Shown in pieces: positions 1,741 to 14,564 of a DNA stretch of 19,963 bases. Below the pieces are notes generated by a model. The model made no database searches. It was not told the DNA's origin and saw nothing but the letters and a program-made list of their open reading frames with translations. Location of the stretch: IMG/VR virus record IMGVR_UViG_3300014911_000574, positions 1-19,963 of that record, one strand, 5' to 3'. Positions within the stretch are counted from its first letter, which is position 1. Each line of letters begins with the position of its first letter. The translations under genes and the position numbers were made by a program.

Positions 1741-2520
1741 TTACTGATGTAGATGGTCTATAATCCATCTATATACGTCTATGGTCTTTCTAGGTAATTC
1801 TCTTGTGTTTGAAACTACAAGACCATCTCTAACATGAACATGTTGTTTAACACCATGAGCAATAACTTCCTCGAAATCACTTGAAAATCCATGATCTGAC
1901 AATACAATCCAGTACTTAGGCTTTGAAAGAGTTATGAGTTCTCTAGCAAATTTAAAGGCCTTGTTATACCAGTAAAAGGCCTTTCTAAGACATTCCTCAT
2001 TATGTAGTGTTTGAAAGAAATGGTGATGTGCTTGATCAGGGATTGGATACCATACAATGAACAAATCCCATTCTTTCACTATATTCCTAATGACAATCTC
2101 ATGAAATCTATCTACAATACTTTCAAAATTGTCTTTAAGAGGTAACCATGCATCTACCCAATTCATTCCATAGAGATCAACATTGATATTAACAGTAGGT
2201 ATTTTTACTGGAACGTTCAAGATCTTAACCTTAAAACCATGTTCAATAGCAATATCCCAAACATACTTACCCTTGTAATCGCCTAAGATAGAGCATGGTT
2301 TGTCAAGTGTTTTAAATCCAAAAACACCATGTTCATTACTGTACTTTCCAGTGAAAAAATTATGTAGTATCGTCGGTGTTATTGGTATATCATCGATGTA
2401 AAGCATATTCCTATGAAAGTTATGGAAAAACCATTTTACATTATCCATATACCAGAGAAATAAATTACAGAAAACAAATGACGCACCATCTAGGATAATT
2501 ACAAGAACTTTATGACTCAT
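1741..2520 (-). CDS. Alkaline phosphatase superfamily protein (nucleotide pyrophosphatase/phosphodiesterase-like)
   Basis: Motifs KVLVIILDGA, PITP..HNFFTG..SNEHGVFGF, PDQAHH, VLSDHGF and a late His; no signal peptide. Confidence 0.85.
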   Translation of the reverse strand: MSHKVLVIILDGASFVFCNLFLWYMDNVKWFFHNFHRNMLYIDDIPITPTILHNFFTGKYSNEHGVFGFKTLDKPCSILGDYKGKYVWDIAIEHGFKVKILNVPVKIPTVNINVDLYGMNWVDAWLPLKDNFESIVDRFHEIVIRNIVKEWDLFIVWYPIPDQAHHHFFQTLHNEECLRKAFYWYNKAFKFARELITLSKPKYWIVLSDHGFSSDFEEVIAHGVKQHVHVRDGLVVSNTRELPRKTIDVYRWIIDHLHQ

Positions 2521-3763: not shown

Positions 3764-4309
3764 TTACTTCACCTTTTTGAATAAGATCCAAAATGTAGCG
3801 TTTATAAGACCATTTGCAACATGTTCTAGGCCTATCAACCTACACAATCTCTTTAAACAATTTGGGTGTAATGTGTGATAGTGAGATTCATCTCCATTGT
3901 ATGCGCAACGATCATAGCAAATAACAGATTGTATGAATAACAATCCGTTTTTCCTCAATACTCGATGACACTCCTTCAGACAACGTACGTAATCTAGTAT
4001 ATGCTCTAATGTCTCAAGCATGACAATGAGATCAAAGTAATTGTCTCGAAATGGGAGTTGATCACCAGATCCTAGAACGTCAGGATTTACATCATACTTC
4101 ACAACATCAAGTCCAACATAAAGTCCCTTGAAATTCCATTCTCTCAATGTTCTTTCCAAAAGCCTATTATGACAACCAATTTCCAAGATCTTAAATGGTT
4201 TATATTGATCGATGATTTGTTTTAATTCGTTTCGAGCTATCAAGATAAGTCCCCAACCGTGTTTCTTAGATTCCTCATGTAACATCTTGGAAAGTTCATG
4301 ATACTTCAT
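3764..4309 (-). CDS. Class I SAM-dependent methyltransferase
   Basis: KILEIGC motif I, YVGLDV, LPFRDNYFDLI...LEH, RVLRKNGLL. Confidence 0.9.
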   Translation of the reverse strand: MKYHELSKMLHEESKKHGWGLILIARNELKQIIDQYKPFKILEIGCHNRLLERTLREWNFKGLYVGLDVVKYDVNPDVLGSGDQLPFRDNYFDLIVMLETLEHILDYVRCLKECHRVLRKNGLLFIQSVICYDRCAYNGDESHYHTLHPNCLKRLCRLIGLEHVANGLINATFWILFKKVK

Positions 4310-5358
4310 GATATACCCTCGAGAAAACCGTACTTGTCAAGTATATCAACAAGTTTTTCAACGATTTTAGACCAGTGGTAATTCTCGATAATGTACTTTC
4401 TTATTCTTGCAAATCTTTCCTTGTACTCTTTTATATGGTCGATCACATGTATTAACTTTTCAATCGCATCATTAACATCGATTTCAAATCCATAACCTAC
4501 ATGTACTGGATTGTCATTGTAAACCTTGACTTTCCTAGCAACCTTAATTAAAACACTATCTTTTGCATAGTCAATCCAAGATCCTTGCTCTGGAACTAGA
4601 ACTACAAGGCCCCTCGCTAATGCTTCTAAGACATTAAGTTCAAAACCACCGCCTCTCGAGAAGCAAAGTAAAATATCACATGAATCGTAAAGATCTACAA
4701 GATCTTTCTCACTTAAAAAACCATTGACTTCAATATGTCTTAACCTTTTGAGTAGCATGTAGTGATACCCACATGGATTCCATGTTTTTAAGACAAGTAT
4801 AGTGTCTGGTCTTTTCCTTTGTACATACCTCATAACTTCAAAGACAAGATCCGCTCCTTTTCTTTCCCCTGAATGCCATAGGAAGAAAAGGACTTTAACA
4901 CCATTTGCAAGTCTTACCCTCATGATATCTGGATTTGTTGGAAAGTTCTTAGGCCTAACAAATTCATCATCTATACCATGAGGTAAAACCTCGATATTGG
5001 TTTTAACACCAGATTCTTGAAATACCTTTTTAGCAAATGTCGATGGGACTATAACAAGATCGAACATGTTGATAATATTTACTGCATATTCAGATATTCG
5101 ATCACTATCTGCAACCTCAAAACCCCCCAGCTTGTTTGAGCATTTCCTCAATCTTTCAGGATCTATGAACTTTGAAATGATGGGATACATTATTGGGTGA
5201 ATCAAAAAATTGTGTTTTACAGACCATAAGATCCTAGACCATTCTTTTTCATCAATGTCATACACATTCACATAGCGTCTCAAGTACTTGAGATGCTTCT
5301 CCGCTATTACTGTAAATGAAACAACATGCCACTTAGGATATACATAAAACAATGCCAT
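4306..5358 (-). CDS. GT-B (GT4-like) glycosyltransferase
   Basis: VIVPS.F, VLPHGID, ERKG.D, SRGGGFELNVLEALARG. Confidence 0.9.
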   Translation of the reverse strand: MALFYVYPKWHVVSFTVIAEKHLKYLRRYVNVYDIDEKEWSRILWSVKHNFLIHPIMYPIISKFIDPERLRKCSNKLGGFEVADSDRISEYAVNIINMFDLVIVPSTFAKKVFQESGVKTNIEVLPHGIDDEFVRPKNFPTNPDIMRVRLANGVKVLFFLWHSGERKGADLVFEVMRYVQRKRPDTILVLKTWNPCGYHYMLLKRLRHIEVNGFLSEKDLVDLYDSCDILLCFSRGGGFELNVLEALARGLVVLVPEQGSWIDYAKDSVLIKVARKVKVYNDNPVHVGYGFEIDVNDAIEKLIHVIDHIKEYKERFARIRKYIIENYHWSKIVEKLVDILDKYGFLEGIS

Positions 5359-6212: not shown

Positions 6213-9200
6213 TTATCTCCTCCTTACTCTATACTCTCTAATACGTTTTCTTTCTTTTCTAGCAAGGATGTACTGCATTTTCTCCATAATCATTTCATCA
6301 GTCATTCCCATTTCCTTTAGAGCCTCCTTGTATTCTTCTGGTGTAATGAGGTTGTACTCAAGCAATAGATCGAGAGTTCTCTCTCTCAAGTATCTAACGT
6401 ATGATTCACGTCTAAACTTTGCATGCAACATTCTAAGTTCAACCTCGACTGGTGTATAACCTAGTTTTGTCAATATGTCTTTCAATGTTTGATCTGTTAA
6501 GTAGCCTTTCGCGTAAGCATCAACTAGATCGTAGAAGATCCTCTCTCTTTCGTCTCGAATAGGCCTTACCTTGAAGACCTGCTTTACAATCTTCTTTTCA
6601 TCTTCTGGTAGACCTAGCTGCTCAAGTTTCTTCTGTATGAATTCTTCAGGAATTGGAACGTAATCTGCATAGCTTAACAATGTTCCTAACGTCAAGGTGT
6701 AGGCCTTACCTTCAGCCTCAAGCAGCATTTTTGCAATATCTTCTGGAACTCCTATTTTCTTCATTCCCTCGATAAACTCACGGTCTGTAATCTTTCCTCT
6801 ACGATACATTCTAATCAATGCTCTATAGATGATGTCTCTCAAGTACAGTGTTCTCGATATCTTAGCGAACGTTATTAGCAATTCAATTTCTTCTGGTCTC
6901 AATGCAAGGCCTTCTAAAGCCTTCTTGATTTCGTCATCAGTCAAAATTCCTTTCTCGTAGGCTTCAAGTAATGCTCCAATGATTCTCCTTCTTTCGTCTC
7001 TAAGAGGCTTGATCTTAAATACTTTCAAAACAATCGCTATTTCATCTTCTGGAAGTCCCAATTGTCTCAATTTCTTAAGTAGGAATTCCTCAGGTATTGC
7101 TATGTAATCTGCATAGTGTAACAATGCGGATAATGACAATGTATATGTCTTAGCTTCTGCATCAAGTATTTTCTTTGCAAGATCCTCTGGAATTCCAATT
7201 CGTCTCATTTCATTTATGAACTGTTCATCAGTTATCTTACCTCTCTGGTATAGCCTAATCAATGTTCTATATGTTAGATCTCTTAGGTATAATGTTCTTG
7301 ATAATTTAGCAAATGACATTAGCAATTCAATTTCTCCTGGTCTCAATGCTAATGCATTTAATTCAGACTTCAATTCTTCATCTCCCAAAAGACCTTTCTC
7401 ATAAGCTTCAATTAAGGCCCAAATTGTCTTTCTCCTTTCGTCTCTCAAAGGCTTGATCTTGAATACCTGCAAGACAATTTGCTTTTCATCATCTGGTAGG
7501 CCTAGTTGATCAAGCTTTTTAACTATGAATTCCTCTGGTATTGCCACATAGTCTGCATAATGCAACAATGCGCTTAACGATAAGGTGTATGTCTTAGCTT
7601 CTGCATCAAGCAATAACTTAGCGAGATTCTCTGGAATTCCTATTTCCCTCATTTTATCGATAAATTCCTGATCAGTAATCTTACCTCTTTGATACAATCT
7701 AATCAATGCTCTATAGGTAATCCTACGTAGATACAATGTTCTTTTTATCCTAGCAAATTCCTTAATGAGCTTTATTTCTTCTTGTCTTAAATCAAGAGCC
7801 TTAAGTTGATCTTCAAGATCTCTCTCTGTTATAAGTCCTTGCTCATACATTTCAATCAAGGCCCAAACCATTCTCCTTCTTTCATCTCTAAGAGGCTTGA
7901 TCTTCAATACCTCTTTGATTATTTTCTTGTCTTCCTCAGGAACTCCTAAGAATGTCAATTTAGCTTCAATGTAATCCTCTGGAAGTTCAATGTAATCTGC
8001 AAAAGATAGTATGTAACCTATCGATAGCTCATAATGGGGAGCATTTGCTTCACACACGAATTTTGCAAGTTCCTCTGGATATCCAAGCTTTTTCATTTCT
8101 TCTATGAATTGTTCTTTCGTTATTGCTCCGCGTCTTAGAGCAACAACTAAGGCCCTAACCTTTTCCCTTGCTATATACCTTTCACGTCTAATCTTTACAT
8201 ACTCCTTAATTGCATTAAGTTCGTAATCAGAAAGATAGATGATCGAGTCTTTAAACGTGTGCTCTCTAATTCCCTCGAACAAATGCTCTCTATACTTTAC
8301 TTCAACCATCGATGCTTCACTTATCTTCTTGAAGTAATCTGGTATATGTTCTGGATCGATAAGGCCCATCTCTGCAAGCTCAATAAGACCATAAACGATA
8401 CGTCTAGTTTCATCTCGCAATGGCCTTCTAAGTATTGAGAATATTGTTTGCTTTGCATCCTCGCTTGTAAATCCCCATATCTGTAATTTCGAACTTAGCC
8501 ATTGAGGATCTGGAAATACTGTATCATAGATCCTGTATAGATCGAATAGTCTCAAATCGAAGTAAAGATGTTGCGTGATTTTCTTTACAAAGTCATCACT
8601 ATATCCCTGTGCTTTAAACCATTTAATATATTCATTGAGATCGATAATGTCTTTACAGTACATTATGAACAAGTCTTTATACGATGGTATTGGTCTTGAA
8701 GCTTCAATTATCAGTTCATACTGTTCTTTCCCAAATCCGTGAAATCCAAAGTATCGATCGAGATCTTCCGCTTTGATCAATCCTCTCCAGTAAGCATTGA
8801 TTACAGTTGATGTGTCGATTATTCTTGGTCTGTATTGGTAGTTTATGACATACTGCATTGGTGTTAATATTGCTGCTGTAATGAATGCGCTTGAGATTCC
8901 GCTTACTATTGCGTCAAATTGAAAGACCTTGCTCACAAATGATTTTACACCGTCAAGTCTAACTCCAGTTCCTGCTATAGTTATTGAAGCTAAATCTAGC
9001 ATCATGTAAGTATTTAATGCAACAAATCCAAACCTTATGAGAATGTCAAATACTGCAGTCAATATTTCCTCGATTGATGTTCCCCTCATTTTCTCATGTA
9101 TTGACTTTGCAATACCTGAAAATGCTTCCAACATTGTCTTGAAAATTGTCTTGACAAGGTTAGTAATTTGTTCTACAATCCATATAAATGCTTGGTATAT

Positions 9201-10709
9201 CATTGAAGTAAATGTTTGAAGTCCTGTGAAAAACCACTTTCCAATGTTCATAAAGAAGTCATAAACTTGCTTTCCCAATGCTAAGAACGATTCAACAATC
9301 ATTCTCGGAAGATTACTTACCATTCTAGGTAAGTCCTGTGTAAGCCACTTCCATGTATTTTGCAGTGTTTCCCAAATTTTTAACAATGGATTGATGAATC
9401 CTTCCAAGAACTTACCTATGACTTGCAATTGCTGGTATACACCTTCAATTGACTTTTTAATGAACTCACCAAGCCCTATAATAGAATCGATAATCCATCT
9501 TCCAAACTCACTTATCATTGTTGGAAATTGAGCTATCGTTCTTGCTAAATTCTCGAAAAACCTCTTTATCGTTTCAAATCCTGCAGTTATTGTTTGTGCT
9601 ATTTGTGTAAAGAATGCTTGTATTCCTTGGAATGCAGATGTTATAGCATTGATAATACTTTGAAATGCAGATGACAAGGCTTGATGTAACTGAGCAAATA
9701 ATGTAGATAATGTTCTACCAATATTTTCAAAGAACGTTACAACTTGACTAAAGAATCCTTGTATGGAAGCTACAACATTTTGAAATGCAGTACTAATAAA
9801 TTGCTGGATTTGAGTAAAGAATGTCGATAATGTTCTTGCTATATTCTCAAAGAAAGTCATTACTTGACTAAAGAAACCTTGAAGTCCAGTCCAAAGTTGT
9901 TGAAATGCAGATGTTATGAACTGACTAATTTGTGTAAACAATGTAGATATTGTAGTTGCTATGTTTTGGAAGAAAGTCATTATTTGACTTACAATACCTT
10001 GGAAGAAATTCATCACGTTTTGAAATGCAGATGTAATGAATTGTTGAATTTGTGTAAAGAATGACGCTAGATTTCGACCTATCTGTTCAAAGAATGACAC
10101 TACCTGAGCAAATGCATTTTGTATTGAAGCTACAATACCTTGTAGAAAGCTCATTATCCTATTCGCGATCTCACTAAACAATGTTTGTAGTCCTTGAATT
10201 CCCTTTACTATCCAGTCAATGAATGTTCTTACGCCTGAAATTACACTATTGACTATTGTCTGAGCTGTTTGTGTAAGGTAATTGTAAACCGTTTGAAATG
10301 CAGATACTACGGCTTCCTGAATTACAGTACCAATTTGTGCTAAGGCCCTACCTATTTCCTCGAAAAACTTTGGGACTTGTTGTAATACATTCCAAATTTG
10401 ATCTAGAAATCCTGTTATTCCTCGATATACACCATCGATAATAGTTCTAAACGTTGAAACTAGTGAATCCCAACCAGATTTTAGGAAGTCATAAATTTGA
10501 TTTCTTACAGTTGTTATGAAACTCCAAATTTGGTCCCACAACCATGAAAAAGCTTTACTGATCTGTTCCCACAACCATCTAATTAGTTGGCCTAATGGAT
10601 CTGTAATACCTCCTATTTCCCATTGCTTTAGAGTATCAGGAATGAGTTCGAGCTTGAATTCCTCAAGTTTAAACTCAAGGTCTAATACCTTAATCGTTAT
10701 TTGAGACAT
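6213..10709 (-). CDS. Large repeat-rich virion protein (1498 aa); terminal fibre / tape-measure-like
   Basis: N-terminal amphipathic 40-aa repeats, central hydrophobic segment, C-terminal 148-aa repeats; largest gene, next to other structural genes, analogous to the large rudiviral fibre protein. Confidence 0.75.
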   Translation of the reverse strand: MSQITIKVLDLEFKLEEFKLELIPDTLKQWEIGGITDPLGQLIRWLWEQISKAFSWLWDQIWSFITTVRNQIYDFLKSGWDSLVSTFRTIIDGVYRGITGFLDQIWNVLQQVPKFFEEIGRALAQIGTVIQEAVVSAFQTVYNYLTQTAQTIVNSVISGVRTFIDWIVKGIQGLQTLFSEIANRIMSFLQGIVASIQNAFAQVVSFFEQIGRNLASFFTQIQQFITSAFQNVMNFFQGIVSQIMTFFQNIATTISTLFTQISQFITSAFQQLWTGLQGFFSQVMTFFENIARTLSTFFTQIQQFISTAFQNVVASIQGFFSQVVTFFENIGRTLSTLFAQLHQALSSAFQSIINAITSAFQGIQAFFTQIAQTITAGFETIKRFFENLARTIAQFPTMISEFGRWIIDSIIGLGEFIKKSIEGVYQQLQVIGKFLEGFINPLLKIWETLQNTWKWLTQDLPRMVSNLPRMIVESFLALGKQVYDFFMNIGKWFFTGLQTFTSMIYQAFIWIVEQITNLVKTIFKTMLEAFSGIAKSIHEKMRGTSIEEILTAVFDILIRFGFVALNTYMMLDLASITIAGTGVRLDGVKSFVSKVFQFDAIVSGISSAFITAAILTPMQYVINYQYRPRIIDTSTVINAYWRGLIKAEDLDRYFGFHGFGKEQYELIIEASRPIPSYKDLFIMYCKDIIDLNEYIKWFKAQGYSDDFVKKITQHLYFDLRLFDLYRIYDTVFPDPQWLSSKLQIWGFTSEDAKQTIFSILRRPLRDETRRIVYGLIELAEMGLIDPEHIPDYFKKISEASMVEVKYREHLFEGIREHTFKDSIIYLSDYELNAIKEYVKIRRERYIAREKVRALVVALRRGAITKEQFIEEMKKLGYPEELAKFVCEANAPHYELSIGYILSFADYIELPEDYIEAKLTFLGVPEEDKKIIKEVLKIKPLRDERRRMVWALIEMYEQGLITERDLEDQLKALDLRQEEIKLIKEFARIKRTLYLRRITYRALIRLYQRGKITDQEFIDKMREIGIPENLAKLLLDAEAKTYTLSLSALLHYADYVAIPEEFIVKKLDQLGLPDDEKQIVLQVFKIKPLRDERRKTIWALIEAYEKGLLGDEELKSELNALALRPGEIELLMSFAKLSRTLYLRDLTYRTLIRLYQRGKITDEQFINEMRRIGIPEDLAKKILDAEAKTYTLSLSALLHYADYIAIPEEFLLKKLRQLGLPEDEIAIVLKVFKIKPLRDERRRIIGALLEAYEKGILTDDEIKKALEGLALRPEEIELLITFAKISRTLYLRDIIYRALIRMYRRGKITDREFIEGMKKIGVPEDIAKMLLEAEGKAYTLTLGTLLSYADYVPIPEEFIQKKLEQLGLPEDEKKIVKQVFKVRPIRDERERIFYDLVDAYAKGYLTDQTLKDILTKLGYTPVEVELRMLHAKFRRESYVRYLRERTLDLLLEYNLITPEEYKEALKEMGMTDEMIMEKMQYILARKERKRIREYRVRRR
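6400..8420 (-). repeat. Coding tandem repeat, 444-bp (148-aa) period
   Basis: P[LI]RDE[RT] motif codons near 6547, 6991, 7435 and 7879 (444 apart), plus a longer diverged unit near 8410. Confidence 0.85.
9620..10140 (-). repeat. Coding tandem repeat, 120-bp (40-aa) period, ~4 units
   Basis: TGAAATGCAG at 9661, 9781, 9901 and 10021 (exact 120-bp spacing). Confidence 0.85.
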
Positions 10710-11425: not shown

Positions 11426-11641
11426 TTAAAACCTAAAGAGCCCTTGTCTCAATAACTTCCTAACTTCTTTAGCAAGTTCTCTCGCGTATTGATAAAAGAC
11501 ACAATTACAATTATGATCAAGAACTTCAAGACTCATTGAAATTACAATCCTCATAATATTGTTCATGATGTTACTTAGTTCTTGTTGTGTCATTGTTGGT
11601 TCTTGAGGTTTTTGTTCTGGTTTTATTTGTACCTCACTCAT
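11426..11641 (-). CDS. Hypothetical protein (71 aa)
   Basis: 4-nt overlap with the upstream gene; SD GGTGA. Confidence 0.7.
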   Translation of the reverse strand: MSEVQIKPEQKPQEPTMTQQELSNIMNNIMRIVISMSLEVLDHNCNCVFYQYARELAKEVRKLLRQGLFRF

Positions 11642-12717
11642 TTAATCACCATGTACTTTATCATTTCTACGATCTTTAAGAGGATTTCTCTATTTAGGCC
11701 TAGTCGCTCATACTTCATGACAATATCATCAACCTCAAGCTTACCCTTGTACCTTGCTCTATACGATAACTCTAGAGCAAATGCTATGTACGATTGAACT
11801 TGTATTGATGGAACGCCATATTGATTAACAATCTTCTTTACTTGTCTAATTATGTTAGCCTGATGAAGTTGGTGTTTAGTTCCTTGGTAATGCAATTGCT
11901 CTGATCGTGAAAGTAAGAGATATCCAGTGTACAACGGTTCTACATGCTTCCAAAAGTCCTTGATTGTATTGTCTAGAAAGTCCTCAAGCTCTGGTTTTAT
12001 CTCAGCATCAACGTCAATCCATCGTGAGTAGTCCCACGACGTTACTTCCCACCACGACTCTCCAACGAATATAGACTCAAGTTTCGATACTGTCTTCCAA
12101 TCTTCTATCGATCTAGCATCAAATACTGAATATTGTTCGATTTCTTCAGTCCATGCTGAAACATCCCAACACGCTACCCCCCAGTAACCAGACTTCAAAA
12201 CTTTCCCTTCAGTTAAAGAGATGATCGACTCGATCGTATTGAGGTAATGCTCTGCAAATTCATGTCTTCTCAATTGCTCTCTCACAAGAAAGATGTATTG
12301 TTTCAAAGTACTTGCATGGTGTCTATACTCTAGAGCATCATGTTTTGTAGTGTGGTATGTCAAATCCCAAATCAATTGCTCGAGATCCGTAGGTGTTATT
12401 GTCGGGGGGTCGTATATTGAAGTGTCATACCTTGACATTCCATACCTTGCTTTTTCAATCTTTTCGAATGGAATAGTAAATTGATCTCTAAAATCGATTT
12501 TAAAGAATGTAAATTCTATCGATGGTAAGTGTGCTAGTAAGTTCAAGTTAAGATCAAGTACAAACCTAAAAAGTACATTATATGATATCAACCATTGAAT
12601 TAATTCCTGCAATGCAGTAAATCTATAGTATGTCGATAAGATACCTCTAAATGTCGTACACTTTTCAAGGTAAATTAGCTTTCTCCAAATTAGCTCTTTA
12701 AATGGTAGGTATGACAT
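11638..12717 (-). CDS. Minor virion protein with C-terminal MCP-like domain
   Basis: C-terminal VKKIVNQYGVPSIQVQSYIAFALEL...KYERLGLNREILLKI aligns to the MCP; aromatic x4 repeats YGMSRYDTSIYD, WGVACWDVSAW, WEVTSWDYSRW. Confidence 0.75.
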   Translation of the reverse strand: MSYLPFKELIWRKLIYLEKCTTFRGILSTYYRFTALQELIQWLISYNVLFRFVLDLNLNLLAHLPSIEFTFFKIDFRDQFTIPFEKIEKARYGMSRYDTSIYDPPTITPTDLEQLIWDLTYHTTKHDALEYRHHASTLKQYIFLVREQLRRHEFAEHYLNTIESIISLTEGKVLKSGYWGVACWDVSAWTEEIEQYSVFDARSIEDWKTVSKLESIFVGESWWEVTSWDYSRWIDVDAEIKPELEDFLDNTIKDFWKHVEPLYTGYLLLSRSEQLHYQGTKHQLHQANIIRQVKKIVNQYGVPSIQVQSYIAFALELSYRARYKGKLEVDDIVMKYERLGLNREILLKIVEMIKYMVIK

Positions 12718-12718
12718 A

Positions 12719-13780
12719 TTACCATCTACATTTTTCTATGAATTTCTTATAGACTTTCTTGTAATCAAAGTTAAGCGCAGTATTGTATGCCTCGATACAC
12801 ATGTTCATGTAAAGATCCTTATTGTTCTTTCTAATATCGATTGCTCTTAACATTGCATTTGCAAGTTCCTCAGGATCGTATAAATGCATGACAAAGTACT
12901 GTTCTGCAGTTGTCTTCCAATACTCGATATGATCATATTCAAAGTAAATAGCGCATTTTTCATTTGTAAACTCGATTAGAGGTTTCATTTTACAACATAC
13001 TACTGGTCTTCCCATTGCTAAAGTCTCGAGAACTGGAAGTCCAAAGCCCTCGCATGCAGATGGAAAGACGAGGTAATCACATGCTCCTAATAGTCCAAGA
13101 ACTTCCTCATGACTTCTTGATCCAAAGTCTCCAACGATGTAAACATTAGGTCTTTTGAATAGTTCTTGTCTTCTCAATTCAGTATGTAGGAGCAAGACAA
13201 AATCATTAGGGGCTTTTTCATTCAAGATGTCAATAGCTTGCATTAGACGATCAAGTTGTTTTCGATGATCATCACGACCAACATAAACGAAAATAACACG
13301 ATCCTTGAAGTCTTGTCTTAACTTTTTCTGGTATTTCTCTGCAAGTTTCTTTGCTCTTTCAACTTCCTCAAAATCGATAGCATGGTGTATAACATCGATT
13401 ACCCTGAGATTTGCTTTTTCAAGACATTCTTTTGTAAAGTATGAATTTGCGATAAAGTCGATGTACTTTGTTGCATGCCATCTTGCTAAATGAGGATATG
13501 GAATACCCTCGATGGTCGCATAAACAAAAGCTCGATTTCTAGTAGATTGTTTAGCCTCGATAAAAACTGGAGCTATGTCGATCAACCATGTTGGATTAGC
13601 AATTACAAACCATAGATATGCATTACCTAGTTTTTGAATTACATCAAATAATGAGATGTATGGTTTTACCAGAACTTCATGACCATGATTTATAAAACAT
13701 TTTTCAATCAACTTAGCTTGTTCATAAAGTGAAACGGCCCTAAAGTATGTCAAGACAAGTCTCATGATAAAACACCTCAA
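12719..13780 (-). CDS. GT-B (GT4-like) glycosyltransferase
   Basis: IANSYFT, YVGR..HRK, FPSACEGFGLPVLETLAMGRPVV. Confidence 0.92.
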   Translation of the reverse strand: MRCFIMRLVLTYFRAVSLYEQAKLIEKCFINHGHEVLVKPYISLFDVIQKLGNAYLWFVIANPTWLIDIAPVFIEAKQSTRNRAFVYATIEGIPYPHLARWHATKYIDFIANSYFTKECLEKANLRVIDVIHHAIDFEEVERAKKLAEKYQKKLRQDFKDRVIFVYVGRDDHRKQLDRLMQAIDILNEKAPNDFVLLLHTELRRQELFKRPNVYIVGDFGSRSHEEVLGLLGACDYLVFPSACEGFGLPVLETLAMGRPVVCCKMKPLIEFTNEKCAIYFEYDHIEYWKTTAEQYFVMHLYDPEELANAMLRAIDIRKNNKDLYMNMCIEAYNTALNFDYKKVYKKFIEKCRW

Positions 13781-14079
13781 TCAAGTATGACTTCGATATA
13801 CAGTTTTGGATTTTTAGCGTGAGGATCTATTTCAATTCGATATTTGTATCCTTGCAATCTAAATTGAGCATAACGAGAAATGGCTTGTAATTGTCTTACT
13901 ACATCTTGTTTCGCAATTTCTTTATCAGTTAATACCTCAATTTCAGTCCCATTAGATAACCTAATTATGTTTCCTTTCACTTCAACGACTTTTAATCCTT
14001 CTTTTTCCTCATGTTTTTCTTCCTCTTTCATTTCTTCAACATTATTTTCAGATCTTATTTCGATATCCGAATACGTCAT
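13777..14079 (-). CDS. Hypothetical protein (100 aa); start reassigned to 14079
   Basis: SD GTGAGGGGA just upstream of ATG 14079; the longer ORF-track start would overlap the MCP gene and its promoter. Confidence 0.7.
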   Translation of the reverse strand: MTYSDIEIRSENNVEEMKEEEKHEEKEGLKVVEVKGNIIRLSNGTEIEVLTDKEIAKQDVVRQLQAISRYAQFRLQGYKYRIEIDPHAKNPKLYIEVILD

Positions 14080-14151
14080 GGAAAGTCCCCTCACAAAAAA
14101 TGAGATATAGTGAGTTACTATATATGTCATATTGTCTCTATATTTCACATG

Positions 14152-14159
14152 TTTATATA
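14152..14159 (+). promoter_or_regulatory. TATA box of the MCP gene
   Basis: TTTATATA ~37 nt upstream of ATG 14196; no SD, so the leader is short or absent. Confidence 0.5.
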
Positions 14160-14195
14160 CATTGTTCTTTTTCATGTTATTCTCGGGTCTAGCGT

Positions 14196-14564
14196 ATGCC
14201 ATATAGATCCTACACAATAAGAATCAAGAAATGGAGTTCAAAGTTCGATCCTGATACAGTACGTAACAGATTTGCTCAAGTAAAAGACATTGCAAATGAT
14301 CAAGCTCAAGAACAATTTGCAAGACTAGTAGACTTTGAACAGGCCGTTAAGCATAGACTTAATGAACTTGGAGTTCCAGTAATTCAAATGCCATTTTACC
14401 TAAACGTTGCTCGACAAATCTATAGAGCAATGACAAGACACACAGGAAAGACATTAGAAACTGAAGTCAAGGTTATTAAAGCAACATGGACTGCAAGAGG
14501 ACTAGACCCTGCAATCATCGATGAAATCATCAAGTTAATGATCGGTTACGTCCCAACATATTAA
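14196..14564 (+). CDS. Major capsid protein, SIRV2-type (Adnaviria) fold
   Basis: RSYTIRIKKWSSKF resembles SIRV2 MCP RSYSQRYAKWQAKF; LNELGV...FY.NVARQIYR and GLDPAIIDEI match the helical bundle; monocistronic with a poly-T terminator. Confidence 0.88.
   Translation: MPYRSYTIRIKKWSSKFDPDTVRNRFAQVKDIANDQAQEQFARLVDFEQAVKHRLNELGVPVIQMPFYLNVARQIYRAMTRHTGKTLETEVKVIKATWTARGLDPAIIDEIIKLMIGYVPTY

What the first reader, a model, noticed from the sequence alone, without database searches (positions are those of the whole stretch)
11638..11880. Second, hidden copy of the capsid fold fused to a larger minor protein
The last ~80 aa of the 359-aa protein align with the MCP C-terminal bundle (VKKIVNQYGVPSIQVQSYIAFALEL vs VKHRLNELGVPVIQMPFYLNVARQI; GLNREILLKI vs GLDPAIIDEI) but lack the basic N-terminal DNA-wrapping arm, and are preceded by aromatic-x4 repeats. 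Inference: an end-cap adaptor that co-polymerises with the MCP helix and anchors the fibres. This bears on how one- and two-MCP virions evolved.
Basis: partly seen in the sequence, partly recalled or inferred. Interest (0 to 1): 0.65.

Follow-up and report, generated by a model that had tools for sequence, protein, structure and literature searches.

The report
Capsid-fold minor protein of a rod virus
The 359-residue protein of this uncultured rod-shaped archaeal virus does hide a full copy (probably two) of the virus's own capsid-protein fold, but it belongs to a family of capsid-like minor virion proteins that 2025-2026 papers describe in related viruses, so it is a real but not a new kind of thing.

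Summary
The window is a complete 19,963-bp linear genome with 123-bp inverted terminal repeats. It is rudivirus-like and comes from sediment and vent metagenomes.

ORF 11638-12717 (-), called X here, belongs to a family of about 88 metagenomic cluster representatives. Its profile matches the virus's own SIRV2-type major capsid protein (MCP, 14196-14564 +) at HHalign probability 95.7-97.8% (E 1e-8 to 7.5e-13). The match covers X 261-357 against MCP 19-119.

An AlphaFold2 model (pLDDT 90.7) puts eight solved adnaviral MCPs at the top of an exhaustive PDB scan (Z 10.6-6.4). The fold spans residues 237-359, arm helices included, not only the last 80. Only the strongly basic tip is missing.

The N-terminal 175 residues are probably a second, decayed MCP copy. 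The evidence is HHalign 74-81%, HMMER double hits in relatives, and MCPs as 4 of the top 6 structural matches.

Through intermediate sequences, X is homologous to the rudiviral minor structural protein (SIRV2 ORF488, SIRV1 ORF510). A 2026 paper and a 2025 preprint already report MCP-like domains or fusions in this protein class.

The end-cap and fibre-adaptor role is plausible but untested. Verdict: a new member of a known kind.

The parts
11638..12717 (-). X: 359-aa MCP-like minor structural protein (P0001). The stop codon is at 11638-11640.
   Evidence: ORF and translation. Family of 88 cluster representatives. AF2 model with pLDDT 90.7 and pTM 0.88. Linked to the rudiviral ORF488/ORF510 minor structural protein family through intermediate sequences.
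11641..12009 (-). C-terminal domain, residues 237-359. It is a complete SIRV2-type MCP fold, with arm helices 242-299 and a helical bundle 304-358.
   Evidence: VIA-align matches: 3fbz Z 10.6; 6wq0 Z 9.4 (model 237-356 against chain 2-128); 3j9x Z 9.2; 3fbl Z 9.0 with rmsd 2.2. The top 8 of 48,161 chains are all adnaviral MCPs. HHalign probability 95.7-97.8%.
11638..11880 (-). It holds the end of the long arm helix and the C-terminal bundle.
   Evidence: Smith-Waterman score 70 against shuffles of 31 +/- 5.
12193..12711 (-). N-terminal domain, residues 3-175. It is probably a second, strongly diverged MCP-like fold: helices 9-62, a lower-confidence loop 63-108, and bundle helices 109-175. R12 and K13 are conserved.
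   Evidence: HHalign of the N-domain profile against the MCP profile gives probability 74-81%, E 1-3e-5, with X 132-166 matching MCP 81-115. The MCP HMM hits the N-domain of relatives P0005 and P0042. In an exhaustive PDB scan with the N-domain model, 4 of the 6 hits with Z>=5 are adnaviral MCPs, at Z 5.3-5.7. Foldseek alone found nothing.
12010..12192 (-). Beta-rich insert between the two helical domains, residues 176-236. It carries two hydrophobic h-x4-h-x4-h triads: W179/184/189 (nt 12151-12183) and W223/228/233 (nt 12019-12051).
   Evidence: DSSP strands at 196-202 and 210-215, pLDDT 85-95. The six positions switch together across the family: 27 all-aromatic and 27 all-aliphatic members.
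14196..14564 (+). Major capsid protein, 122 aa (P0002), SIRV2 type.
   Evidence: Pfam PF12193 at E 4.4e-10, above the cut-off. PDB 6wq0 and 3j9x by sequence. 22-27% identity to rudiviral coat proteins.
12719..13780 (-). GT4-type glycosyltransferase, immediately upstream of X. It lies one base from the X start, so the two probably form one operon.
   Evidence: Pfam Glycos_transf_1 at E 3.6e-14. The MCP-GT-X order is conserved in L002, L004/5, L006, L009/10, L016 and L018.
11426..11641 (-). 71-aa ORF whose start overlaps the end of X by 4 nt. Small ORFs follow X in relatives too.
   Evidence: ORF list. 44% identity to the 80-aa ORF after X in L002. The same position is occupied in L009, L016 and L018.
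6213..10709 (-). 1498-aa repeat-rich protein downstream of X. By position and size it is the candidate terminal-fibre protein, the counterpart of SIRV2 P1070.
   Evidence: Baculo_PEP_C at E 1e-14. Internal 444-nt and 120-nt repeats. Large proteins of 1124-1357 aa with the same weak Pfam hits sit at the same position in L004, L009, L016 and L018. Homology to P1070 itself was not tested.

Best explanation
ORF 11638-12717 (-) encodes this virus's version of the 'MCP-like minor structural protein' of rod-shaped adnaviruses. That family includes SIRV2 ORF488 (gp33), SIRV1 ORF510, MRV1 gp19, and the SMRV1 gp20 'structural protein'.

The protein arose from ancient duplication of the capsid gene. Residues 237-359 are a full SIRV2-type MCP fold, with arm helices and a helical bundle. 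Residues 3-175 are probably a second, more decayed copy. A 60-residue beta-rich insert with a six-residue hydrophobic ladder joins the two. In effect the protein is a single-chain mimic of the MCP dimer that normally wraps the DNA.

Shown here: the homology, the fold, the family membership, and the conserved MCP-GT-X-(small ORFs)-giant protein gene order.

Inferred: because it mimics a capsomer, it takes the place of an MCP dimer at a few special positions of the nucleoprotein helix, most likely the ends. There its C-domain would contact the last MCP turn. Its arm, which lacks the basic tip, would stop further polymerisation. The non-MCP insert and loops would offer a docking surface for the terminal-fibre complex.

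My odds:
- MCP-fold minor-structural-protein homologue: about 0.85.
- N-domain is also an MCP fold: about 0.75.
- The specific end-cap/adaptor mechanism: about 0.35.
For: Homology to the MCP:
- Smith-Waterman z of about 8.
- HHalign probability 95.7%, E 9.5e-9, and 97.8%, E 7.5e-13.
- Reciprocal HMMER hits.

Fold:
- AF2 model with pLDDT 90.7.
- Adnaviral MCPs are the top 5 hits and the top 8 of 48,161 chains. Z runs from 10.6 to 6.4.

N-domain.

Family link:
- The rudiviral ORF488-family HMM hits the distant X-family members P0085 (E 2.3e-11) and P0075 (E 1.1e-5).
- The intermediate group A6 against the X family: probability 99.9%, E 6e-34. A6 against the rudiviral family: probability 97.7%, E 1.7e-12.
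- SMRV1 gp20, annotated 'structural protein', belongs to that rudiviral family at E 4e-197.
- PMC13700489 states that the rudiviral minor structural protein (Q8QL30) and its ahmunvirus and Baiyanvirus homologues contain an MCP-like domain.

Minor rather than major role:
- Between the window and L002, the MCP is 88% identical, the GT 58% and X 44%.
- A canonical MCP was identified in nine of the eleven distinct loci carrying X that were examined. In L013, L014 and L015 none was recognised, and L013 and L015 are contigs under 1.6 kb.

Exposed or structural role: one relative, P0042, carries two CarboxypepD_reg beta-sandwich domains inserted in the N-domain loop.

Contact or compatibility with the MCP: the helix-loop-helix turn of the X C-domain co-varies with that of the cognate MCP across 7 lineages (permutation p 0.001-0.006).

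Gene order with the giant putative fibre protein.
Against: - There is no direct evidence that X is in virions of this virus. The virus is uncultured.
- That the rudiviral homologue is a virion component rests on a GenBank annotation and on a citation I could not read.
- The identification of Q8QL30 as SIRV1 ORF510 is inferred from accession order.
- The direct profile comparison of X with the rudiviral family is not significant (probability 1.8%). The link is transitive.
- Among MRV1 proteins, the C-domain matches the second MCP paralogue gp09 best (probability 85%). Such paralogues are reported not to be incorporated into rudiviral virions (PMC10541130).
- Nothing places X at the ends rather than along the helix.
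- N-domain Z scores (5.3-5.7) are below the level at which helical matches are safe on their own.
Confidence: 0.55

Rival explanations
1. X is a non-virion assembly factor. In this reading it is an MCP-derived decoy, chaperone or nucleator. It would bind MCP or the genome ends inside the cell, preventing premature polymerisation or starting it at the inverted terminal repeats, and would not be packaged.
For: The C-domain matches MRV1 gp09 best among MRV1 and SIRV2 ORFs. Second MCP paralogues of rudiviruses are reported as not incorporated into virions (PMC10541130). The C-domain arm lacks the basic tip. X evolves faster than the MCP.
Against: X is transitively homologous to a protein annotated or cited as a rudiviral structural protein. 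It sits inside the structural gene block. One relative carries inserted beta-sandwich domains typical of exposed proteins.
Confidence: 0.2
2. X is a single-chain capsomer that forms part of the capsid shaft throughout, alone or mixed with MCP dimers. This is the reading suggested in bioRxiv 10.1101/2025.08.23.671958 for PBV300 and 'Demeterviridae'.
For: There are two MCP-like domains in one chain. X lies next to the GT and MCP genes. The N-terminus carries a conserved R12-K13. The loop co-varies with the MCP.
Against: X is 44% identical where the MCP is 88% identical between the same two genomes. A highly conserved canonical MCP is retained alongside X in nine of the eleven distinct loci examined. 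The solved rudiviral shafts 3j9x and 6wq0, which were retrieved here, hold the small MCP only (that they are homodimeric is my own knowledge). A 60-residue insert, and up to 200 residues of extra domains in a relative, would have to fit a tight helix.
Confidence: 0.1
3. The resemblance is chance or compositional similarity between helical proteins, and there is no common origin.
For: BLASTP finds nothing. Pfam PF12193 does not hit P0001. Helical bundles often give middling structural scores.
Against: No shuffle out of 2000 reached the observed score. Profile-profile E is 1e-8 to 7.5e-13. HMMER hits are reciprocal. The top 8 of 48,161 PDB chains are all adnaviral MCPs. Motifs are conserved at equivalent positions in 63 sequences.
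Confidence: 0.01

Closest known systems
Rudiviral minor structural protein family (SIRV2 gp33/ORF488, SIRV1 ORF510 = probably Swiss-Prot Q8QL30, MRV1 gp19, SRV 464-aa protein, SMRV1 gp20 'structural protein'). PMC13700489 calls it the 'MCP-like MSP' and also reports it in Ahmunviridae and Baiyanviruses.
   Same: X is homologous to it through intermediate sequences: probability 99.9% and 97.7%. The alignment is co-linear from X 85-347 to MRV1 gp19 133-449. It has the shared 'Y-G-x-S-x-Y...Y-D-P' type motif and the C-terminal 'K-W/Y-x-x-x-G-L' helix. It has an MCP-like domain. It is located in the structural gene block.
   Different: X is about 110-150 residues shorter. The direct profile match is not significant. 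In X the MCP likeness is detectable by sequence, whereas in the rudiviral proteins it is not. X sits directly after the GT, while the rudiviral gene lies several genes away on the other strand.
The 'fusion gene containing two SIRV2-like MCP subunits' next to a glycosyltransferase in Methanophagales virus PBV300 (UYL64987.1) and in 'Demeterviridae' (bioRxiv 10.1101/2025.08.23.671958).
   Same: The gene context is the same, MCP - GT - X. The claim is the same, one ORF holding a complete capsomer-like pair of MCP folds. The genome also carries a UbiE/UbiG-like methyltransferase (window 3764-4309).
   Different: I could not compare sequences, because OP413840 is not in the collections at hand. Identity of the families is therefore inferred from context. 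In my data the N-terminal copy is much weaker than the C-terminal one. The window comes from marine sediment and vent metagenomes, not hot springs.
Second MCP paralogues of some rudiviruses (for example MRV1 gp09, a 108-aa 'putative coat protein') and the MCP1/MCP2 pairs of Lipothrixviridae, Ungulaviridae and Tristromaviridae.
   Same: They share the fold. MRV1 gp09 is the best MRV1 or SIRV2 match to the X C-domain (probability 85%, E 6e-6).
   Different: Those are free-standing proteins of about 100-200 aa. X is a 359-aa multidomain protein, and it evolves much faster than its partner MCP.

Membership tests
SIRV2-type adnaviral MCP fold (Pfam PF12193 Sulf_coat_C) | Match to the Pfam model above its gathering score | tested here: not met
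   P0001 gives no PF12193 hit even at E<=1. Relatives give only sub-threshold hits, at E 0.003-0.09, to PF12193 or PF25647 at the equivalent profile positions.
SIRV2-type adnaviral MCP fold (Pfam PF12193 Sulf_coat_C) | Profile-level sequence homology to bona fide MCPs | tested here: met
   HHalign probability 95.7%, E 9.5e-9, and probability 97.8%, E 7.5e-13, over MCP 19-119. HMMER hits are reciprocal.
SIRV2-type adnaviral MCP fold (Pfam PF12193 Sulf_coat_C) | Three-dimensional fold superposes on solved MCPs (arm helices plus helical bundle) | tested here: met
   Predicted model against 3fbz, 6wq2, 5w7g, 6wq0, 3fbl, 3f2e, 6v7b and 6d5f gives Z 10.6-6.4. These are the top 8 of 48,161 chains. 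Model residues 237-356 align with 6wq0 residues 2-128. This rests on a predicted model, not a solved structure.
SIRV2-type adnaviral MCP fold (Pfam PF12193 Sulf_coat_C) | Basic N-terminal tip that contacts the DNA | tested here: not met
   MCP 1-17 has net charge +5 (family mean 5.0). The equivalent helix of the X C-domain (237-259) has net -4, with a family mean of 0. The very N-terminus of X keeps a conserved R12-K13.
SIRV2-type adnaviral MCP fold (Pfam PF12193 Sulf_coat_C) | Forms dimers that wrap A-form DNA into a helix | not testable with these tools
   This needs assembly experiments or cryo-EM.
Rudiviral/ahmunviral MCP-like minor structural protein (SIRV2 ORF488 family) | Sequence homology to the rudiviral proteins | tested here: met
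   The direct comparison is not significant (probability 1.8%). The transitive link is: the rudiviral HMM hits the X-family members P0085 (E 2.3e-11) and P0075 (E 1.1e-5). A6 against A5 gives probability 97.7%, and A6 against A2 gives 99.9%. The merged profile gives probability 56%, E 1e-4.
Rudiviral/ahmunviral MCP-like minor structural protein (SIRV2 ORF488 family) | Contains a domain with the MCP fold | tested here: met
Rudiviral/ahmunviral MCP-like minor structural protein (SIRV2 ORF488 family) | Present in purified virions in low copy number | not testable with these tools
   The virus is uncultured. For rudiviruses I have only the annotation and a secondary citation. The primary paper is not held.
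Single-ORF double-MCP 'capsomer fusion' (PBV300 UYL64987.1, 'Demeterviridae') | Gene lies beside the glycosyltransferase and the MCP gene | tested here: met
   Window: X 11638-12717, GT 12719-13780, MCP 14196-14564. Six related loci have the same order.
Single-ORF double-MCP 'capsomer fusion' (PBV300 UYL64987.1, 'Demeterviridae') | Two MCP folds in one polypeptide | tested here: inconclusive
   The C-terminal copy is firm. The N-terminal copy is supported by HHalign at 74-81%, by HMMER second hits in P0005 and P0042, and by MCPs being 4 of the 6 hits with Z>=5. But Z is only 5.3-5.7, and Foldseek finds nothing.
Single-ORF double-MCP 'capsomer fusion' (PBV300 UYL64987.1, 'Demeterviridae') | Sequence homology to UYL64987.1 | not tested
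   OP413840 is not in the collections. No family member that was looked up carries that accession.
Two-MCP heterodimer systems (Lipothrixviridae type) | Two free-standing MCPs of similar size, both major components | tested here: not met
   X has 359 aa and several domains. It is 44% identical where the MCP is 88% identical between the same two genomes. Only one free-standing MCP gene matches PF12193 in the genome.

The most novel reading that the evidence does not exclude
X is a covalent pseudo-dimer of the capsid protein that works as a dedicated 'capping capsomer'. It would occupy the last MCP position at each end of the DNA-protein helix, end polymerisation, and carry the fibre complex. 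It would be kept compatible with the MCP lattice by concerted evolution of a contact loop, possibly through short-tract gene conversion. This would be the first defined helix terminator in the realm Adnaviria, and a living intermediate between one-MCP and two-MCP virions.
Probability: 0.3. Interest if true: 0.65.

Novelty: new member of a known kind. Interest (0 to 1): 0.4.

Why it matters
How rod-shaped archaeal viruses end their DNA-protein helix and attach their terminal fibres is not known. A minor virion protein built from the capsid fold is the obvious candidate for that job.

In this virus clade, unlike in classical rudiviruses, the capsid likeness of the protein is still visible at sequence level. 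That makes it a good bridge between three things: the rudiviral ORF488-type minor protein, the 'fusion capsomer' genes reported in PBV300 and 'Demeterviridae', and the ordinary MCP.

It also gives concrete handles for experiments: two MCP-like domains, an insert with a coupled six-residue ladder, and a loop that co-varies with the MCP. It bears on whether single, homodimeric or heterodimeric capsomers came first in Adnaviria. The basic discovery has, however, been published for relatives.

Tried and rejected
- BLASTP of X (whole, or residues 270-359) against the MCP: no alignment. A sensitivity failure, overridden.
- Pfam and PHROGs on X: nothing useful.
- PDB sequence search with X: nothing.
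- tblastn of X against 50,697 phage and archaeal-virus records: nothing.
- IMG/VR pattern scans with X and with the MCP: no relatives.
- X-family profile against the MRV1 and SIRV2 genomes by HMMER: no hit.
- Foldseek on the N-domain model: no meaningful match.
- Foldseek of the whole model against BFVD, and the ESM Atlas shape search: no full-length look-alike.
- Complex prediction of X with the MCP: 'no answer', score 0.00. Not counted for or against binding.
- Direct HHalign of the rudiviral ORF488 family against X or against the MCP: not significant. The link needed intermediates.
- HHalign of the N-domain against the C-domain of X: not significant (probability about 6%).
- PBV300 record OP413840: not in the collections.
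- Primary papers PMC2566220 and PMC5898233: not held. No supplements held for two papers.
- Chiyouvirus identity considered and dropped: no mini-CRISPR arrays in the window.
- Whole-domain cognate versus non-cognate similarity of X and the MCP was only weakly informative, and one of my block offsets was off by one residue. Only the 10-residue loop test is used.
Full report
WHAT THE WINDOW IS

The 19,963-bp window is a whole IMG/VR virus record with perfect 123-bp inverted terminal repeats. It is a complete linear genome of about 34% G+C. Near-identical DNA occurs in sediment, seawater and hydrothermal-vent metagenomes.

ORF 14196-14564 (+) is a 122-aa SIRV2-type major capsid protein (MCP). It matches Pfam PF12193 at E 4.4e-10, above the cut-off. 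By sequence it matches the solved MCPs of SSRV1 (6wq0) and SIRV2 (3j9x). It is 22-27% identical to rudiviral coat proteins. The virus is therefore a distant relative of the Rudiviridae, in the realm Adnaviria.

THE OBSERVATION

The finding's coordinates, 11638-11880 on the minus strand, are residues 280-359 plus the stop of the 359-aa ORF 11638-12717. I call this protein X (P0001).

- BLASTP sees no similarity between X and the MCP.
The score is 70, against 31 +/- 5 for 2000 shuffles, and no shuffle reached it.
- The tryptophan repeats are real: W179/184/189 and W223/228/233.

THE FAMILY AND THE HOMOLOGY

A word search found one relative, P0003, at 43% identity. An exhaustive profile search of 1.84 billion representatives found 88 proteins, 51 of them at E<1e-30. 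Most are 350-440 aa. Those looked up in NCBI are only 'hypothetical protein', in MAGs labelled Thermococci, Ignisphaera or Thermoproteota.

- A 63-sequence alignment of the family (A2) against a 15-sequence MCP alignment (A3) gives HHalign probability 95.7%, E 9.5e-9.
- With a broader MCP profile, the match rises to probability 97.8%, E 7.5e-13. It extends to X 261-357 against MCP 19-119.
- Plain HMMER finds the relationship in both directions within the loci I collected.

THE FOLD

AlphaFold2 on A2 gives a confident model, with mean pLDDT 90.7 and pTM 0.88.

- Foldseek ranks AFV1 and SIRV2 MCPs at or near the top, with weak E-values because the query is a whole multidomain protein.
- VIA-align gives 3fbz at Z 10.6; 5w7g at 9.9; 6wq0 at 9.4 (model 237-356 against chain 2-128, 120 residues); 3j9x at 9.2 (241-356 against 7-128); and 3fbl at 9.0 with rmsd 2.2. 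The next hit has Z 5.9.
- In the scan of 48,161 representative chains, which is independent of Foldseek, the top eight hits are all adnaviral MCPs.

The MCP-like unit is therefore residues about 237-359, a complete fold with its arm helices, and not only the last 80 residues. What it lacks is the strongly basic tip. MCP 1-17 has net charge +5, while X 237-259 has -4, with a family mean of 0.

THE N-TERMINAL HALF

A separate model of residues 1-236 (pLDDT 87.7) gets nothing from Foldseek. In the exhaustive VIA scan, four of the six chains with Z>=5 are adnaviral MCPs: 6d5f, 3f2e, 6wq0 and 3fbl, at Z 5.3-5.7, with 73-124 residues aligned. Four more follow in the top 28.

The N-domain profile matches the last two MCP helices (X 132-166 against MCP 81-115) at probability 74-81%, E 1-3e-5. 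The MCP HMM hits the N-domains of relatives P0005 and P0042 as a second domain.

I take the N-domain as a second, decayed MCP copy, at about 0.75. The protein then reads as follows:
- MCP-like N-domain, residues 3-175.
- Beta-rich insert, residues 176-236.
- MCP-like C-domain, residues 237-359.

N- and C-domain profiles do not match each other directly.

CONTEXT

The order MCP - GT4 glycosyltransferase - X - one or two small ORFs - a giant protein of 1100-1500 aa recurs in L002, L004/5, L006, L009/10, L016 and L018. In the window, the GT stop and the X start are one base apart, and the next ORF overlaps the end of X by 4 nt.

Between the window and L002, the MCP is 88% identical, the GT 58% and X 44%. 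X therefore evolves like an accessory protein and not like a stoichiometric shaft protein.

WHAT IS KNOWN

- PMC13700489 reports that Baiyanviruses, ahmunviruses and rudiviruses share a minor structural protein (for example Swiss-Prot Q8QL30) with a domain structurally related to the MCP, which it calls the 'MCP-like MSP'.
- By accession order, Q8QL30 should be SIRV1 ORF510, the homologue of SIRV2 ORF488. This identification is my inference.

I collected that rudiviral family (56 proteins; alignment A5).

- A5 does not match X directly (probability 1.8%).
- Its HMM does hit the distant X-family members P0085 (E 2.3e-11) and P0075 (E 1.1e-5).
- An alignment of seven such intermediates (A6) matches the X family at probability 99.9%, E 6e-34, over 343 columns. 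It matches the rudiviral family at probability 97.7%, E 1.7e-12, over 281 columns.
- SMRV1 gp20, annotated 'structural protein', is a member of that rudiviral family.
- The SMRV1 genome paper counts three minor structural proteins among the genes shared by rudiviruses.

X is thus the counterpart, in this clade, of the rudiviral ORF488-type minor structural protein.

MECHANISM

Shown: the homology, the fold, the family membership and the synteny.

Inferred: a single-chain mimic of the MCP dimer can sit in the MCP lattice at a few special positions. I consider the helix ends most likely. The reasons are that the C-domain arm has lost the basic tip, that the protein carries non-MCP surfaces, and that its gene lies with the giant putative fibre gene. 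The non-MCP surfaces are the insert and, in one relative, two CarboxypepD_reg beta-sandwich domains in the N-domain loop.

One further hint of lattice contact comes from the helix-loop-helix turn, MCP 58-67 and X 300-309. It co-varies by lineage:
- The 'GVP.IQ' motif occurs in both proteins of the window, L002 and L004.
- A 'G..G.(F/N)R' type motif occurs in both proteins of L006, L009, L017 and L018.
- A variant with 'SP' and no glycine occurs in both proteins of L008.

The permutation p is 0.001 on score and 0.006 on identities over seven lineages. In L002 the 18 nt encoding the six-residue core are 17/18 identical between the two genes. This may reflect gene conversion or a shared constraint.

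The complex prediction gave no answer and is not used.

RIVALS

- A non-packaged assembly factor. The C-domain matches MRV1's second MCP paralogue gp09 best (probability 85%), and such paralogues are said not to enter virions.
- A shaft-forming single-chain capsomer, as the preprint suggests.
- Chance similarity, which is excluded.

VERDICT

The class of protein has been described in relatives, so this is a new member of a known kind. The added details are the sequence-level bridge between families, the coupled hydrophobic ladder, and the loop that co-varies with the MCP.

Noticed in passing
window 12019-12051 and 12151-12183 (-), X residues 179/184/189 and 223/228/233: The six h-x4-h-x4-h positions change together across 63 family members. 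27 members are all-aromatic and 27 all-aliphatic (V). Among the aromatic members printed, the six are mostly one residue type: all W, all F or all Y, with some mixed F/Y/W sets. This suggests one tightly packed ladder of six equivalent side chains.
   Followed up: partly
window 14367-14396 (+, MCP residues 58-67) and 11791-11820 (-, X residues 300-309); also L002, L004, L006, L008, L009, L016-L018: The helix-loop-helix turn of the MCP and of the X C-domain co-vary by virus lineage (permutation p 0.001-0.006 over 7 lineages). In L002 the 18 nt of the core are 17/18 identical between the two genes, and in L004 16/18. The cause could be short-tract gene conversion or a shared constraint. This is unresolved.
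   Followed up: partly
window 13777-14564: The pair [small minus-strand ORF + MCP] is inverted relative to relatives. In L002, L004, L006, L009, L016 and L018, MCP, GT and X are co-directional. In the window the MCP is divergent from GT-X.
   Followed up: partly
window 6213-10709 (-): The 1498-aa protein holds two internal repeat systems: four 444-nt (148-aa) units at about 6493-8123 and four 120-nt (40-aa) units at 9681-10160. It has a Baculo_PEP_C match at E 1e-14. By position it is the likely terminal-fibre protein. Homology to SIRV2 P1070 was not tested.
   Followed up: no
L006 1640-3403 (P0042, 587 aa): This X homologue carries two CarboxypepD_reg-like beta-sandwich domains (Pfam E 2.5e-15). 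They are inserted in the loop equivalent to X residues 63-108. This hints that the loop is surface-exposed.
   Followed up: partly
window 1741-2520 (-) and 3764-4309 (-): The first ORF is a type I phosphodiesterase/nucleotide pyrophosphatase homologue (PF01663, E 2e-11). The second is a UbiE-like SAM methyltransferase (PF08241, E 5e-14). Similar genes are present in L004, L009, L014 and L016. Methyltransferases of this kind are highlighted for 'Demeterviridae' in the 2025 preprint.
   Followed up: no
window 4306-5358 (-) and 12719-13780 (-): There are two GT4 glycosyltransferase genes in a 20-kb genome, as in SIRV2 (ORF335 and ORF356).
   Followed up: no
L002 4221-4640; L016 220-528; L018 6924-7235: Related virus contigs carry small CRISPR-associated-like genes: Cas_csx3 in L002 and L016, and Cas_VVA1548 between the MCP and the GT in L018. 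None was seen in the window.
   Followed up: no
P0001 against P0002 (method note): BLASTP with default settings reported no alignment at E<=100 for a pair whose Smith-Waterman score lies about 8 sd above shuffles. A negative BLASTP between short helical proteins is not informative.
   Followed up: yes
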